Virus record (IMG/VR): IMGVR_UViG_3300047558_000137
Coordinates: 310,001-374,000 of that record
Reading direction: 5' to 3' (one strand)
Length of the DNA stretch: 64,000 nt
Below, piece by piece: positions 1,439 to 63,567 of the stretch. The position numbers and the translations under genes were made by a program. The notes beneath the pieces are model-generated. The model had not been told where the DNA came from. It did no database searches and was given only the letters and a program-made list of their open reading frames with translations. The stretch's first letter is position 1. Each line of letters opens with the position of its first letter.

Positions 1439-1530
1439 TGGCGGAAGGCGGAGGAGTCGAACCCCATCCCCGTTAGGAGAACCTGGTTTTCAAGGCCAGT
1501 CGCAGGACCAACCCCGCTGCATCACCTTCC
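1439..1530 (-). tRNA. trnS: tRNA-Ser(UGA), non-canonical 8/4 acceptor/T-stem structure
   Basis: 8-bp acceptor GGAAGGUG/CGCCUUCC, 4-bp T stem GGGG/CCUC, long variable arm UCUCC-UAAC-GGGGA, anticodon loop CUUGAAA, G73, CCA. Confidence 0.88.
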
Positions 1531-1769: not shown

Positions 1770-1844
1770 TGGTGGAAGTAGCTAGATTCGAACTAGCGAT
1801 AGTTACCGTATGAAGGTAGTGCATTACCACTTTGCTATACTTCC
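1770..1844 (-). tRNA. trnM: tRNA with CAU anticodon (probably elongator Met)
   Basis: Acceptor GGAAGUA/UACUUCC, anticodon arm UACC-UUCAUAC-GGUA, T arm GCUAG-UUCGAAU-CUAGC, CCA. Confidence 0.88.
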
Positions 1845-2484: not shown

Positions 2485-2513
2485 ATTGTATTTTATTTAT
2501 CTCTTTGTGTCAA
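2485..2513 (-). promoter_or_regulatory. Composite sigma70 + late promoter
   Basis: TTGACA-N17-TACAAT with TAAATA inside the spacer. Confidence 0.8.
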
Positions 2514-2547: not shown

Positions 2548-2638
2548 TGGTAGGAGAGACCGGAGTCGAACCGATATCAGCCAATTATCTGTTGCTACGG
2601 GGTATAAGCCCGCCGTTTTACCATTAAACTACTCTCCC
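2548..2638 (-). tRNA. trnI: tRNA-Ile(UAU) with an atypical long variable arm
   Basis: Anticodon arm GCGGG-CUUAUAC-CCCGU, ~21-nt variable region, T arm AUCGG-UUCGACU-CCGGU, A73, CCA. Confidence 0.85.
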
Positions 2639-2646
2639 AGAAAATT

Positions 2647-2732
2647 TGGTGCGACTGGCCGGAATCGAACCGGCACGCCATTACAGCGGGAGATTTTAAG
2701 TCTCCTGTGGCTACCAATTACACCACAGTCGC
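2647..2732 (-). tRNA. trnL: tRNA-Leu(UAA)
   Basis: Anticodon arm GGAGA-CUUAAAA-UCUCC, long variable arm, A73, CCA. Confidence 0.95.
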
Positions 2733-2797: not shown

Positions 2798-2826
2798 ATT
2801 GTAATTTATTTATCTTTTACTGTCAA
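2798..2826 (-). promoter_or_regulatory. Composite sigma70 + late promoter
   Basis: TTGACA-N17-TACAAT with AGATAAATAAA in the spacer; near copy of 2485-2513. Confidence 0.8.
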
Positions 2827-3922: not shown

Positions 3923-4259
3923 GCTTAATTTCCCTTACTGGATCGCCCAATGCTTCGGCTAGGTTGTTCTTAATTGTAACACGTATGTTATTATAATTAC
4001 GAATTTCAACTGCTCTGCGCCCAATCTCCTCGTAGCCTAGGTTGTCTTCTAGTCCGCGACGTAGATCGCTTTCCAATGCCCAAATGCTTAGATGCACAAC
4101 TTCTAGTCGCTCAAGCAATGGCTGTACAGGTTCTAGATCAAATCTTTTGGCCTGTTCAGCATAGTAATCGTATTCAGCTTGGTTACCTAGACCTTTATCT
4201 AGTTTAATCTTGGCAATTACTAATCGATCTAATAGTTCTACTACTGGGAAAAATATCAT
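3903..4259 (-). CDS. Conserved hypothetical coiled-coil protein (DUF6165-like)
   Basis: ELLDRLVIAKIK...IWALESDLR...NNIRVTIKN pattern; ATGA coupling to the upstream gene. Confidence 0.6.
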   Translation of the reverse strand: MIFFPVVELLDRLVIAKIKLDKGLGNQAEYDYYAEQAKRFDLEPVQPLLERLEVVHLSIWALESDLRRGLEDNLGYEEIGRRAVEIRNYNNIRVTIKNNLAEALGDPVREIKHDHLSV

Positions 4260-5365
4260 ACGTACTTCTTAAATTGTTCTAATGTTAAGTCAGGAAGATT
4301 AATGTAATCTGTGTCTGCATATTGTGGCAGTGCATCAATTAAGATTTTATACAAATCAAAATAGACTTCTTCTGCTAAACGATACATAATCATTCTGTTA
4401 TGCTGACGAATTTCTTGTGTTGGCTCAACAAGTTTTACATCAGATTTAACTAAGCGTTCAACTTCTGCGGCCACTGCACGTAGGCGCTCTCCTGGATACT
4501 CTAGACTATCGTAAGACTCATCTATTAGATCGCCAAACGTTTTAAACCCAAAGGCATGTAAGTGTCTAAGTGTATATTGCCCGCCTACTACAAGAAATGG
4601 ATGCCCAACTAATAACGGCTTGTATGTTTTCTCTGTTACAAAGGTTTCGTTAGGTGCTGTTTCCAATGCTAGACTAAATTCTGTGTGCCAGTAATGCGGC
4701 GGATAGAAGTTTTCAAATCTAAAATCTTCATGGAAGTTTGCATTGGGCCAATCAATGATTGGCTTAACATCTAGTTCAGTACGATCGGGAATTCTGTAAT
4801 CAATGAAGCTGTGGATGCTTTGATTTAAGATATCTCGTTCAATCAGTTCCTTAAACATTTCTTCTCTATTGTGTCGGCGTGTGCCATTTAAGAAAAGATA
4901 TTTAAAAGTCTTTGGAAATGTGCTGATACCATCTGCGGTATATGCAAGTCTAGCACGATTAAACTCTGTAGTTAGTCTATAGACAAAATACTTGTCTAGA
5001 TTGTGTTCAACGAAACCATCAACTGCCCTATTGCCTTGCTTAACCAAGTGAATAGGTATGCGTCTACGCACATAGTCCCTAGTGGGGTAATAACTACTGC
5101 TTAGTGTACTTTCACACTCACTTGGATAGTAGAAAATAATTGGAATGCCCAGGCTAGCACAACGATCAATAATTTGCTTGGCATAGTCGCCATCGTTGCC
5201 CGGGACTTCTTCAACAAAGGCATCTGTTATTACAGCATCGCCTGTAATATCTTCTGGATTTTTTACAATGGTGTAGGGTATGTTATACAGTTCCAGTACT
5301 GTAGTTAATAATCGATTTCTTGCACTACTAGGCCCAAGGGTCTGTCGAATTAAAAAATTTATCAT
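4256..5365 (-). CDS. Glycosyltransferase-like protein (GT10-like 'TEKT' family)
   Basis: FSLALET...FVTEKTYKPLLVGHPFL...GFKTF...IDESYD. Start moved to the ATG at 5365 because the ORF-track N-terminus runs through a tRNA. Confidence 0.6.
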   Translation of the reverse strand: MINFLIRQTLGPSSARNRLLTTVLELYNIPYTIVKNPEDITGDAVITDAFVEEVPGNDGDYAKQIIDRCASLGIPIIFYYPSECESTLSSSYYPTRDYVRRRIPIHLVKQGNRAVDGFVEHNLDKYFVYRLTTEFNRARLAYTADGISTFPKTFKYLFLNGTRRHNREEMFKELIERDILNQSIHSFIDYRIPDRTELDVKPIIDWPNANFHEDFRFENFYPPHYWHTEFSLALETAPNETFVTEKTYKPLLVGHPFLVVGGQYTLRHLHAFGFKTFGDLIDESYDSLEYPGERLRAVAAEVERLVKSDVKLVEPTQEIRQHNRMIMYRLAEEVYFDLYKILIDALPQYADTDYINLPDLTLEQFKKYV

Positions 5366-5371
5366 GTTATA

Positions 5372-5448
5372 TGGTGCGGATGGTGGGACTCGAACCCACA
5401 AAATTTGGCTTCTAAGACCAACACGTATACCAATTCCATCACATCCGC
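5372..5448 (-). tRNA. trnL: tRNA-Leu(UAG), short variable loop
   Basis: Acceptor GCGGAUG/CAUCCGC, anticodon arm UUGGU-CUUAGAA-GCCAA, 5-nt variable loop, A73, CCA. Confidence 0.9.
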
Positions 5449-5459
5449 GTATGTGATCT

Positions 5460-5488
5460 AGTATAGTGTATATATCTTTATTTGTCAA
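5460..5488 (-). promoter_or_regulatory. sigma70 promoter for tRNA-Leu(UAG)
   Basis: TTGACA-N17-TATACT, 11 nt before the tRNA. Confidence 0.8.
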
Positions 5489-7082
5489 GCGGGTATAGCA
5501 TTTTATAAAAATCTTTTGATGCAATACCTGTTAAACTTTGTTCTCTATACTTTTCACCCAGTTGATTAAAATACTCGATTGCCAGTGATTCAGTGTCCGA
5601 ATCTAATTCTGTTAATAATCCCTCTGTCGGTATATCATAGTATGTAGCCTGCGATACCCAAACACTCCTAGACCATAGATACTTTTTATTTCTAGCATCA
5701 ACAACATTTCTTCTACTTGTATTATTAATTAAATCATACAACATTTGAATCGAGTTTTGCTGCCTACCAACTTCTCTCATGTTTTCCCAATAAGGAGTAT
5801 CCTTTTTGCAAAGATGAAAGGCAAAACGAATACGTAGTAGTGTATCTGCCATACGCATATTAACATACTCGTTGAAGTCTTCTTTCCATGTGCAGTCTAA
5901 ATTTGTATCTGTTTTTAGATTGTCTACAACAAATTCAATTTTGCCTAGTGCAGTTGAAAAAGCATTAGCATCATACGCATCTACTAATCCATGACTTAGC
6001 CCTATTGTTATACAATTATTAACAAATGCTTTTTCTTGGTATCCAGGCTCCCATGAAATTAATCTAAAGTCTACATCTGTTTTACCAGTTTTTTGGTAAT
6101 ACTCATCCTTTAGTGATTCAACATTGGTTGTATGGCGAGAATTGAATACATATCCCTCGCCACTACGAACATCCATTGCTACACTAAAATGCCAACCTTG
6201 ATCCATTGCACGAATGTATGCATTGCTAGTTCGTTCGTTATCGTCGGTATATTTGTGTGGCCCAACAATGCATCTATCATTGAATGAATCATCTAGATGC
6301 TTAAACTTGTAGGGTAATTTTTTGCACAAAACTCTAGCGAAGCCAGTGCAGTCAAAATATAGATCTGCTGTTGCATGTGAGTCATCGTCTAATAGTAGAT
6401 AATCAATATCGCCATTTTCTTTTAACACAACATCCTTAATTGCAATAGGTAACTCTTTAACACCGGCTGGCTTGCCTACCATATTATGAACCACTGCCCC
6501 AATTCGCATAGCATTAATATGATATCCAAATGTGCCACGTGGATGATTCCATTGCCCGGTTGTTATATTATAAGGTATTCTATCGTTACGCGAATACCAA
6601 TAAGATTGGCTTGAATGTCCTGTATATAAATCCTTAGGAGTTCTATACTCTAATTGATTTAGTAGGCCTTTATTTTTTAAGTACAACCATACATCGAGCA
6701 TATCATATGGTGTTTGCGATTTATAAAAAGATGAATACTTTACTGCATCTATTCCACTCTCTTTAAAATCATTAAGTATTCCCATGTTAGGAACATCAGC
6801 ATGATTTGTGTAGAAAACTGAATTGCTGTTATCCCAGTCCTGAAACCGAGACCCTACTCGAAATATCGATCCCGATTCTTTAATCCATTTAATATCTTTT
6901 TCAAACCCTAGCACCTTGTTCATAAAAGATGATGAGTTCCATTGTAGTGCTTCTCCTACTCCCACCACTGGAGTTTTTGGATCGTATATAAGTGTTACGT
7001 CTAGATCTGGTCTATTACGCTTAATAGCAGATGATACAAAATTGCCGGCTGCGCCAGCGCCAACAACAATTATTTTTTTCAT
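5478..7082 (-). CDS. Tryptophan-halogenase-family flavoprotein (degenerate catalytic motifs)
   Basis: GAGAAG FAD motif, VGVGEA, GYHINA, ADLYFDCTGF, GYVF, IGLSHG. Start moved to MKKIIVVG at 7082, after the tRNA. Confidence 0.85.
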   Translation of the reverse strand: MKKIIVVGAGAAGNFVSSAIKRNRPDLDVTLIYDPKTPVVGVGEALQWNSSSFMNKVLGFEKDIKWIKESGSIFRVGSRFQDWDNSNSVFYTNHADVPNMGILNDFKESGIDAVKYSSFYKSQTPYDMLDVWLYLKNKGLLNQLEYRTPKDLYTGHSSQSYWYSRNDRIPYNITTGQWNHPRGTFGYHINAMRIGAVVHNMVGKPAGVKELPIAIKDVVLKENGDIDYLLLDDDSHATADLYFDCTGFARVLCKKLPYKFKHLDDSFNDRCIVGPHKYTDDNERTSNAYIRAMDQGWHFSVAMDVRSGEGYVFNSRHTTNVESLKDEYYQKTGKTDVDFRLISWEPGYQEKAFVNNCITIGLSHGLVDAYDANAFSTALGKIEFVVDNLKTDTNLDCTWKEDFNEYVNMRMADTLLRIRFAFHLCKKDTPYWENMREVGRQQNSIQMLYDLINNTSRRNVVDARNKKYLWSRSVWVSQATYYDIPTEGLLTELDSDTESLAIEYFNQLGEKYREQSLTGIASKDFYKMLYPLDK

Positions 7083-7090
7083 AGATAAAA

Positions 7091-7167
7091 TGGTGCGCCC
7101 GGAGGGACTTGAACCCGCGACCAATGGATTATGAGTCCACTGCTCTAACCAACTGAGCTACAGGCGC
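7091..7167 (-). tRNA. trnI: tRNA-Ile2(CAU), lysidine type (Met not excluded)
   Basis: Anticodon arm GUGGA-CUCAUAA-UCCAU; C4-G69 and C5-G68 TilS-type determinants; CCA. Confidence 0.85.
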
Positions 7168-63209: not shown

Positions 63210-63567
63210 ATGTAGTATTCATCTAGATTAAGTGGTCACACTTTGCCCGCACAGGGCAAAAAATGACTTCATCTGAGTTGCACAGTCACTTAGCGTTACA
63301 TCAATTACAGAGGCGGTTGTCCGGTACCTCGAGATGCGTCTTATCACAACGGCGGGCTAATATCTATACGCTAACATACATATTAACCGTGCTCAATCAC
63401 TTGAGCGTCTTTTTAGCTTTTATTACTCTATTCAAATAACCAAACCGTAGCATTTACGATCGACGTCCTGTTAAGGATGGTGGTTAAGCACTCTAGTCAG
63501 CATAGAGATTTCCGTCCCCCTTTTTATCGGGTTGTCACTAGGCACCTGAACTTAGCCGGTGCGAGCC
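63210..63567 (-). ncRNA. Unidentified ~360-nt highly structured RNA downstream of the GIY-YIG gene
   Basis: About a dozen helices, a GUGA tetraloop, a 7-bp pseudoknot UUAGCGU/ACGCUAA, G.U pairs indicating the minus strand; no long ORF. Confidence 0.65.

What the first reader, a model, noticed from the sequence alone, without database searches (positions are those of the whole stretch)
2548..2638. tRNA-Ile(UAU) with a class-II-like extra arm, redundant with a lysidine-type Ile2
Seen: anticodon UAU and a ~21-nt variable region (AGC-AA-CAG-AUAA-UUG-GCU); a CAU Ile2-type tRNA also lies at 7091. Known: bacteria normally read AUA with TilS-modified CAU, UAU anticodons are rare, and Ile tRNAs have short variable loops. 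Inference: two independent routes to decode AUA, one of them TilS-independent. The long arm could also change which synthetase charges it.
Basis: partly seen in the sequence, partly recalled or inferred. Interest (0 to 1): 0.6.

Follow-up and report, generated by a model that had tools for sequence, protein, structure and literature searches.

The report
Isoleucine tRNA with second anticodon-like arm
A giant phage carries a real transfer RNA that should read the rare isoleucine codon AUA, and its extra arm is a conserved copy of the ordinary isoleucine (GAU) anticodon arm; the same design recurs in about 100 phage and bacterial sequences, and I found no paper that describes it.

Summary
Window 2548-2638 (- strand) is a high-scoring tRNA with anticodon UAU, an encoded CCA end and a 21-nt variable region. 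An Ile2-type CAU tRNA lies at 7091-7167.

It is not a one-off. The window belongs to a 374-kb jumbo phage with 34 tRNAs. The same tRNA design occurs in T5-like Vibrio phages, about 80 uncultured viral contigs and about 40 bacterial genomes.

Across 75 distinct copies, every stem covaries. The extra arm is a short hairpin whose 7-nt loop is C-A-G-A-U-A-A. GAU is invariant in the loop (75/75), although the search did not impose it. The third stem pair from the loop is C-G.

The arm therefore supplies G34, A38 and C29-G41. These are listed or recalled IleRS determinants that the real UAU arm lacks.

The coupling runs both ways:
- Every viral hit with this UAU arm has the long arm (56/56).
- Every viral hit with the arm module has a UAU anticodon (67/67).

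Thirteen of 15 carrier bacteria have the Trp/Phe-type IleRS, the type that charges UAU tRNAs poorly in E. coli.

My best explanation is a TilS-independent AUA decoder whose extra arm presents the Ile identity signal to IleRS. This is inferred, not shown. I found no description in the literature I could search.

The parts
2548..2638 (-). Whole tRNA(UAU) gene, 91 nt including the encoded CCA
   Evidence: ARAGORN; Rfam RF00005 at 62.3 bits; sequence read
2597..2613 (-). Anticodon arm GCGGG-CUUAUAC-CCCGU; the anticodon UAU lies at 2604-2606
   Evidence: The stem pairs are invariant or G-C/G.U in 75 family members, but the retrieval pattern largely fixed this arm.
2576..2596 (-). 21-nt variable region A-GCAACAGAUAAUUGGC-UGAU
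2580..2595 (-). Extra-arm hairpin: G-C, a bulged G, then C-A-A/U-U-G closing a 7-nt loop
   Evidence: Covariation: 6, 25 and 33 double changes in the three inner pairs. RNAalifold predicts the same stem.
2585..2591 (-). Extra-arm loop CAGAUAA, with GAU at 2587-2589. It copies the tRNA-Ile(GAU) anticodon loop except that A replaces U33.
   Evidence: G, A and U are invariant in 75/75 members, the last A in 74/75 and the sixth position is A in 67/75. The search pattern did not impose this.
2647..2732 (-). tRNA-Leu(UAA), 8 nt upstream of the tRNA(UAU); probably the same transcript
2798..2826 (-). Sigma-70-like promoter TTGACA-17-TACAAT (11/12) about 65 nt upstream of tRNA-Leu(UAA)
   Evidence: This is a consensus match only; the total count is not above the shuffles.
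7091..7167 (-). Ile2-type tRNA(CAU), the lysidine-dependent second route to AUA

Best explanation
This is a functional elongator tRNA of a jumbo phage. It is probably transcribed together with tRNA-Leu(UAA). It decodes the isoleucine codon AUA through an unmodified-C-independent UAU anticodon, so it needs no TilS.

It belongs to a mobile family of tRNAs found in phages, tRNA arrays and scattered bacterial chromosomes. In this family the variable region holds a near-complete mimic of the tRNA-Ile(GAU) anticodon arm: a 7-nt loop C-A-G-A-U-A-A on a short stem whose third pair from the loop is C-G.

I propose that the host's bacterial-type IleRS reads the Ile signals (G34, A35, U36, A37, A38, C29-G41) on this extra arm, together with A73 and U12-A23 of the body. 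That type of IleRS stacks a Trp on base 34 and charges UAU anticodons poorly. The ribosome meanwhile reads the real UAU arm. Identity and decoding would then sit on two separate arms.

Shown here: the gene, its fold, the conservation and covariation, the strict coupling of arm and anticodon, the distribution, and the IleRS type of the carriers.

Inferred: charging with Ile, recognition of the arm by IleRS, and AUA-specific decoding.
For: 1. It is a genuine tRNA.
- Searches detect it.
- In 75 distinct homologues, 97.3% of cells are paired and the covariation score is 0.647 against 0.187 in shuffles (0/500 shuffles as high).
- The tertiary Levitt pair covaries: A15-U48 in 54 members, G15-C48 in 20, one exception.

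2. The arm is a selected module.
- Its stem covaries while the loop GAU is 75/75.
- The window's arm is identical to that of Vibrio phage Thalassa, although their acceptor, D and T arms differ.

3. The coupling runs both ways.
- With the arm left free in the pattern, all 56 viral hits with this UAU arm carry the long arm.
- With the anticodon arm left free, all 67 viral hits with the arm module carry UUAU.

4. The arm supplies what the real anticodon arm lacks.
- The real arm has U34, C38 and G29-C41.
- The mimic has G34, A38 and C-G at the 29-41-equivalent pair (69/75).
- These features, with A73 (69/75) and U12-A23 (73/75), fit the E. coli Ile identity set. PMC9976931 lists the anticodon, t6A37, the discriminator and the stem pairs; A38 is from my memory of Nureki 1994.

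5. There is a need for it.
- E. coli IleRS charges UAU tRNA inefficiently because of W905 (PMC3575796).
- Of 15 carrier bacteria, 13 have the Zn-domain IleRS with W (12) or F (1) at that site.
- Both bacteria found with an ordinary short-loop tRNA-Ile(UAU) lack that domain.

6. No partner protein travels with the gene.

7. The phage uses AUA heavily (22.6% of Ile codons) and has no TilS.
Against: - There is no biochemical or RNA evidence.
- Geometry is unsolved. In known class II tRNAs the extra arm does not sit where the anticodon arm sits, so IleRS would need a different docking mode, or the two hairpins would have to swap stacking on the D stem.
- The mimic has A rather than U at loop position 2.
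- Its sixth position is U or C in 8/75 members, although t6A37 is said to matter for bacterial IleRS.
- Two of 15 carriers have an IleRS without the Zn domain.
- The carrier census is small and not corrected for phylogeny.
- The family was collected with sequence patterns, so the constancy of the anticodon arm is partly imposed.
- The conserved C-G pair could simply stabilise the stem next to the bulge.
Confidence: 0.5

Rival explanations
1. The tRNA is a working Ile/AUA decoder, but the extra arm is read by something other than IleRS. Candidates are a modification enzyme (for U34 or t6A), the ribosome (to limit AUG misreading), or a tRNA-cleaving defence nuclease, for which the GAU loop would act as bait or shield.
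For: The loop is conserved at the sequence level while its stem covaries, which shows that some factor reads it but not which one. Phage tRNA sets are known to counter tRNA-targeting defences (general knowledge). RtcB RNA ligase lies directly upstream of the tRNA in two alphaproteobacterial loci, and about 5 kb from it in one viral contig.
Against: This does not explain why the loop is specifically the Ile anticodon GAU(A)A, why the 29-41-equivalent pair is C-G, or why the module is found only with UAU. No protein co-occurs consistently. RtcB is near the tRNA in only 3 of about 100 loci.
Confidence: 0.25
2. The long arm redirects charging to a class II synthetase (LeuRS or SerRS). AUA would then be partly read as Leu or Ser, as with nematode nev-tRNA-Ile(UAU) or bacterial allo-tRNAs.
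For: There are precedents. nev-tRNAs with UAU are leucylated in vitro (PMC3333845, PMC4300185), and UAU is among the commonest allo-tRNA anticodons (PMC5389517). The family has A73 and mostly A15-U48, which I recall as E. coli Leu features.
Against: The body is class I: a 4-bp D stem, a 7-8-nt D loop and a 7/5 acceptor/T arrangement. The extra stem has only 3-4 pairs, too short for SerRS by established knowledge. U12-A23, A73 and a GAU loop all point to Ile.
Confidence: 0.07
3. The gene is a decaying or non-functional tRNA-like relic, or the 18-nt insert is removed from the transcript, so the arm has no role in the mature RNA.
For: Related jumbo phages carry several oversized or odd tRNA-like genes. 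A few family members look broken: L043, L050 and L053 have a mismatched acceptor stem, and L160 has lost its 5' half.
Against: Compensatory changes occur in all five helices and in the Levitt pair across 75 sequences, and CCA and A73 are kept. The insert itself is under selection. No bacterial splicing system is known for such a site.
Confidence: 0.04

Closest known systems
Bacterial tRNA-Ile(UAU) ('tRNAIle3') of Mycoplasma mobile, Bifidobacterium, Neorickettsia and Lactobacillus casei/plantarum (PMC3575796)
   Same: It has a UAU anticodon and is expected to read AUA without lysidine. It can coexist with TilS and tRNA-Ile2, as in L. casei.
   Different: The known examples are ordinary class I tRNAs with a short variable loop. 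They rely on an adapted IleRS (Arg or Lys at the W905 site, or the eukaryote-like enzyme). Here the tRNA carries a 20-26-nt arm with a GAU loop, and 13/15 carriers keep a Trp/Phe-type IleRS.
Nematode nev-tRNA-Ile(UAU) and bacterial allo-tRNAs with UAU anticodons (PMC3333845, PMC4300185, PMC5389517)
   Same: A long variable arm is combined with the UAU anticodon.
   Different: Those have Leu- or Ser-type class II bodies (or 8/4 and 9/3 branches). Their arm works by shape, and they are charged with Leu or Ser. This family has a class I 7/5 body and a short arm with a sequence-conserved Ile-anticodon-like loop.
Anticodon-arm mimics read by synthetases outside tRNAs, such as the E. coli thrS mRNA operator (my own knowledge) and the anticodon mimics in synthetase mRNAs cited in PMC9976931
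   Same: A hairpin that copies the cognate anticodon loop serves as a docking site for the synthetase.
   Different: Those mimics sit in mRNAs and regulate translation. Here the mimic is inside a tRNA, next to a different real anticodon.
tRNA-Ile2(CAU) with lysidine (E. coli ileX/ileY type)
   Same: It has the same job, reading AUA as Ile, and the same phage carries one at 7091-7167.
   Different: It needs TilS both for identity and for decoding. The UAU tRNA does not.

Membership tests
Canonical elongator tRNA (Rfam RF00005) | Cloverleaf with 7-bp acceptor, D, anticodon and 5-bp T arms that score above the family threshold | tested here: met
   62.3 bits against a gathering score of 29. 97.3% of cells are paired across 75 homologues.
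Canonical elongator tRNA (Rfam RF00005) | Tertiary signature: U8, A14, G18G19, R15-Y48 Levitt pair, T loop UUCRA | tested here: met
   U8, A14, GG and GGTTCRA are invariant, although GGTTCRANTCC was part of every retrieval pattern. The 15-48 pair covaries: A-U in 54, G-C in 20, one exception.
Known bacterial tRNA-Ile(UAU) (M. mobile type) | UAU anticodon in a 7-nt loop with U33 and A37 | tested here: met
   The loop is CUUAUAC.
Known bacterial tRNA-Ile(UAU) (M. mobile type) | Short (4-5 nt) variable loop | tested here: not met
   The variable region is 21 nt here and 20-26 nt in all family members.
Known bacterial tRNA-Ile(UAU) (M. mobile type) | Partner IleRS adapted to U34 (Arg/Lys at E. coli W905, or an IleRS without the Zn domain) | tested here: not met
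   Of 15 carrier bacteria, 12 have W, 1 has F and 2 lack the Zn domain. The phage's own host is unknown.
Known bacterial tRNA-Ile(UAU) (M. mobile type) | Charged with isoleucine | not testable with these tools
   This needs an aminoacylation assay. Indirect signs only: A73 in 69/75, U12-A23 in 73/75, and the GAU loop.
Class II tRNA (Leu/Ser/Tyr) | Long variable arm | tested here: met
   The variable region is 21 nt with a hairpin.
Class II tRNA (Leu/Ser/Tyr) | Bacterial class II core (3-bp D stem, enlarged D loop) and a Leu, Ser or Tyr anticodon | tested here: not met
   The D stem has 4 bp, all four pairs covarying, and the D loop has 7-8 nt. The anticodon is UAU.
allo-tRNA (8/4 or 9/3) | 8- or 9-bp acceptor stem with a 4- or 3-bp T stem | tested here: not met
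   The arrangement is 7/5 in all 75 members.
Intron-containing tRNA | Group I intron in the anticodon loop, or a bulge-helix-bulge motif at the insert | tested here: not met
   The insert is 18 nt, lies in the variable region, forms a simple hairpin, and gives no Rfam intron hit.
tRNA-Ile2 (lysidine type), for the gene at 7091-7167 | CAU anticodon with TilS determinants C4-G69 and C5-G68, and similarity to ileX/ileY | tested here: met
   Sequence. The best E. coli matches are annotated tRNA-Ile at 84-85% identity. The TilS determinants are from my memory of Ikeuchi 2005.

The most novel reading that the evidence does not exclude
A natural tRNA that separates its two readings in space. The synthetase would recognise an Ile(GAU) anticodon-arm copy in the variable region, while the ribosome reads a different anticodon (UAU) on the canonical arm. 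This would be a portable answer to the problem that bacterial IleRS rejects U34, and it would spread on phages and mobile elements. A more extreme form is that the two equal-sized hairpins swap places on the D stem, giving one molecule two conformers.
Probability: 0.45. Interest if true: 0.9.

Novelty: new variant of a known kind. Interest (0 to 1): 0.72.

Why it matters
Textbook tRNA identity for isoleucine rests on the anticodon itself. That is why bacteria need lysidine, and why UAU tRNAs are thought to need a changed IleRS.

A tRNA family that carries the Ile anticodon signal on a spare arm would be a third solution to the AUA problem. It would need no change in the host, which suits phages and mobile elements that move between hosts.

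It would also be a natural template for engineering tRNAs whose decoding can be changed without losing charging.

Cultured systems exist for testing it: T5-like Thalassavirus phages on Vibrio harveyi and V. campbellii.

Practically, these genes are currently annotated as plain tRNA-Ile, and the arm goes unremarked.

Tried and rejected
Rejected by family counts.
- **Single-sequence folding.** Uninformative: z-score 0.09, and the minimum-energy fold is not a cloverleaf.
- **Homology with the neighbouring tRNA-Leu(UAA) or with odd tRNAs of related jumbo phages.** XbC2, GAP32, CBB and fHe-Yen9-04 share the Leu gene but not this tRNA.
- **A co-travelling protein.** Neighbours differ from locus to locus. 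Pfam on ten flanking ORFs gave unrelated families. RtcB lies next to the tRNA in only two loci, and about 5 kb away in one viral contig.
- **A native, vertically inherited bacterial gene.** Rejected: only 4 of 58 Microbulbifer species have it.
- **A replacement for TilS.** Rejected: 5 of 5 carriers tested have TilS.
- **A phage-encoded TilS.** None found.
- **Literature.** Six full-text searches and eight papers gave no description of the family. Subscription-only papers are not covered.

Full report
**What is there**

ARAGORN finds six tRNAs in the first 7.2 kb of the window, all on the - strand. One of them is tRNA-Ile(tat) at exactly 2548-2638. Rfam's tRNA model scores it 62.3 bits (threshold 29) and places an 18-nt insertion in the variable region.

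Read directly, the RNA is GGGAGAG-UA-GUUU-AAUGGUA-AAAC-G-GCGGG-CUUAUAC-CCCGU-A-GCAACAGAUAAUUGGC-UGAU-AUCGG-UUCGACU-CCGGU-CUCUCCU-A-CCA.

It lies 8 nt after tRNA-Leu(UAA). A near-consensus sigma-70-like promoter sits upstream of that pair (a pattern match only).

**Setting**

The window is bases 310001-374000 of a single 374,314-bp viral contig with 40.7% GC.
- The genes are phage genes: terminase, SSB and a RecA/UvsX-like recombinase.
- The terminase is 55% identical to that of Pseudomonas jumbo phage PA5oct.
- The tRNA-Leu resembles those of the Mimasvirus and Eneladusvirus jumbo phages.

The genome encodes 34 tRNAs. They include:
- Ile(GAU);
- an initiator-like CAU tRNA with a C1xA72 mismatch;
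- an elongator-like CAU tRNA (window 1770);
- an Ile2-like CAU tRNA (window 7091), with C4-G69, C5-G68 and 84-85% identity to E. coli tRNA-Ile genes.

No TilS-family gene is present. AUA makes up 22.6% of Ile codons.

**It is a family**

A BLAST search with the tRNA alone hit 43 T5-like Vibrio phage records (Thalassavirus and relatives). There, a 93-nt gene is annotated simply as tRNA-Ile(tat).

In the alignment, the anticodon arm and the whole insert are nearly identical to the window's, while the acceptor, D and T arms differ.

I then ran three pattern scans.
- **Exact arm:** 21 viral contigs.
- **UAU arm plus T loop, variable region free (4-30 nt):** 56 viral contigs, every one with a 20-26-nt region. 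The same pattern gave 60 bacterial contigs. About 40 of these are the same long-arm tRNA, two are ordinary short-loop tRNA-Ile(UAU), and the rest are an unrelated match inside tRNA-Ser or similar class II tRNA genes.
- **Arm module plus T loop, anticodon arm free:** 67 viral contigs, all with UUAU in the anticodon position.

The arm and the UAU anticodon are therefore coupled in both directions.

**Structure**

I aligned 75 distinct sequences.
- My cloverleaf has 97.3% of cells paired and a covariation score of 0.647, against 0.187 in shuffles (0/500 shuffles as high). Sliding the partners by 1-3 columns drops pairing to 35-50%.
- RNAalifold predicts the same structure without my input.
- The acceptor stem takes many forms: its seven pairs show 7-45 double changes each.
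- The Levitt pair covaries: A15-U48 in 54 members, G15-C48 in 20.

The extra arm is G-C, a bulged G, then three pairs. The outermost of the three is C-G in 69/75; the other two covary freely, with 25 and 33 double changes. They close a 7-nt loop.

The loop is C(68)/U(7), A(68), G(75), A(75), U(75), A(67), A(74). That is CAGAUAA, the tRNA-Ile(GAU) anticodon loop with A in place of U33. One member has exactly CUGAUAA.

**Reading the arm**

The real anticodon arm has U34, C38 and G29-C41. The extra arm has G, A and C-G at the equivalent places.

The review PMC9976931 lists the E. coli isoleucine identity elements as the anticodon, t6A37, the discriminator, C4-G69, U12-A23 (printed as U12-G23 in the review) and C29-G41. 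A38 is from my memory of Nureki 1994.

The family keeps A73 (69/75) and U12-A23 (73/75), while the neighbouring D-stem pairs vary.

Taniguchi et al. (PMC3575796) showed that E. coli IleRS charges a UAU tRNA poorly, because Trp905 of the Zn-binding domain stacks on base 34. Arg or Lys at that site fixes this. They noted as a puzzle that some Trp-type bacteria still carry a tRNA-Ile(TAT) gene.

The eukaryote-like IleRS reads a carbonyl group common to several bases at position 34 (PMC11685878).

**Census of carriers**

I located ileS in 15 bacteria that carry the long-arm tRNA.
- 12 have C-x-R-C-W at the W905 site.
- 1 has F there.
- 2 lack the Zn domain: a Eubacterium MAG and a Flavobacteriales MAG. 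In the latter the tRNA sits in a 21-tRNA array on an 11-kb contig.

Both bacteria with a short-loop tRNA-Ile(UAU) lack the Zn domain.

PMC13752280 says that nearly half of bacteria use the other IleRS type. So 13/15 is suggestive, but it is not corrected for phylogeny.

All five carriers tested also have TilS. Only 4 of 58 Microbulbifer species have the gene. Its neighbours differ between loci: it is solitary in some and part of a tRNA array in others. It is therefore an accessory, mobile gene, and no partner protein travels with it.

**Explanation**

The simplest account of all this is that the tRNA decodes AUA with its UAU arm, and that the extra arm presents the Ile identity signal to a host IleRS that would otherwise reject U34. 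The gene would then work in any host with the common IleRS, without TilS.

This part is inference. The main difficulty is geometric: the extra arm of class II tRNAs does not lie where the anticodon arm lies.

Two features of the sequence would allow the extra arm to take the anticodon arm's place on the D stem, but nothing here tests that.
- The two hairpins are the same size: five stem layers plus a 7-nt loop.
- The extra arm is tied to the T arm by an unusually long 4-5-nt linker.

Rival explanations are another reader of the loop, mischarging as in nev-tRNAs, and a relic gene.

**Novelty**

tRNA-Ile(UAU) is known. So are long-arm tRNAs with UAU anticodons that are charged with Leu or Ser, and so are anticodon-arm mimics in mRNAs. 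I found no description of a tRNA that carries an anticodon-arm mimic of its own amino acid family in its variable region. A 2026 IleRS paper still treats tRNA-Ile(UAU) as a rare case resolved by the ribosome.

I rate it a new variant of a known kind, with high interest because cultured phage-host pairs make it directly testable.

Noticed in passing
window 1440-1530 (- strand): A tRNA-like gene that ARAGORN missed. It has an 8-bp acceptor stem, a 4-bp T stem, a long extra arm, anticodon UGA (Ser), G73 and an encoded CCA. Rfam tRNA-Sec scores it 37.9 bits, below the threshold of 47. It looks like the (8/4) tRNA-Ser type reported from phages in PMC5389517, and it would fill the genome's missing Ser(UGA).
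   Followed up: partly
own genome 176114-176189 (outside the window); L001:529-602, L002:409-484, L003:2925-2997, L004:319-391: A tRNA with the amber-reading anticodon CUA (labelled tRNA-Pyl or Sup) occurs in this phage and in all four related jumbo phages I looked at. In those four relatives it lies within about 3 kb of a tRNA-Leu(UAA) gene.
   Followed up: no
L001:1097-1186; L004:697-806; L002:5807-5920: Related jumbo phages carry other oversized tRNA-like genes. XbC2 has a 90-nt tRNA(CAU) with a long variable region. CBB has a 110-nt 'tRNA-Val(GAC)' directly after tRNA-Leu(UAA), with an enlarged anticodon loop. fHe-Yen9-04 has a 114-nt 'pseudo' tRNA. None is homologous to the UAU family.
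   Followed up: partly
window 63434-63567 (- strand): A strong match to the Rfam Polynucleobacter-1 RNA motif: 79.8 bits against a threshold of 37.
   Followed up: no
window 2798-2826 and 2485-2513 (- strand): Two sigma-70-like promoters with the same hexamers (TTGACA-17-TACAAT, 11/12) bracket the Leu(UAA)-Ile(UAU) pair.
   Followed up: no
L110:1067-2275 and L122:2504-3709: An RtcB RNA ligase gene ends about 70 nt upstream of the long-arm tRNA(UAU) in two alphaproteobacterial MAGs. A distant RtcB also lies about 5 kb from it in viral contig L046.
   Followed up: partly
L064, L065, L068, L074, L080, L083, L085, L087, L089, L090, L096, L107, L109, L111, L116: The hairpin CGGGCUUAUACCCCG is the core of this family's UAU anticodon arm. 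In Clostridia and other Bacillota MAGs it occurs as the variable arm of tRNA-Ser(GGA)-like genes. This is another variable arm whose 7-nt loop looks like an anticodon loop.
   Followed up: no
window 1770-1844 (- strand): A CAU tRNA with the unusual anticodon loop UUCAUAC (C38, as in the UAU tRNA) and a C27-A43 mismatch. I took it for elongator Met, but its identity (Met or a second Ile2) is not settled.
   Followed up: partly
L137-L162 (for example L139, L142, L146): Family members found through the arm module show variants in the anticodon arm: an A31-C39 mismatch that leaves a 4-bp stem, G37 instead of A37, and U38 or A38. A sub-group (L028, L029, L033, L045, L048) has discriminator C73 with arm loop CAGAUUA.
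   Followed up: no
window 4256-5524 and 5372-5448: The mechanical ORF 4256-5524 (TTG start) runs across tRNA-Leu(UAG) at 5372-5448, so its real start is probably further downstream. ORF 5478-7124, which resembles a tryptophan halogenase (phrog_2928), likewise overlaps the tRNA at 7091.
   Followed up: no
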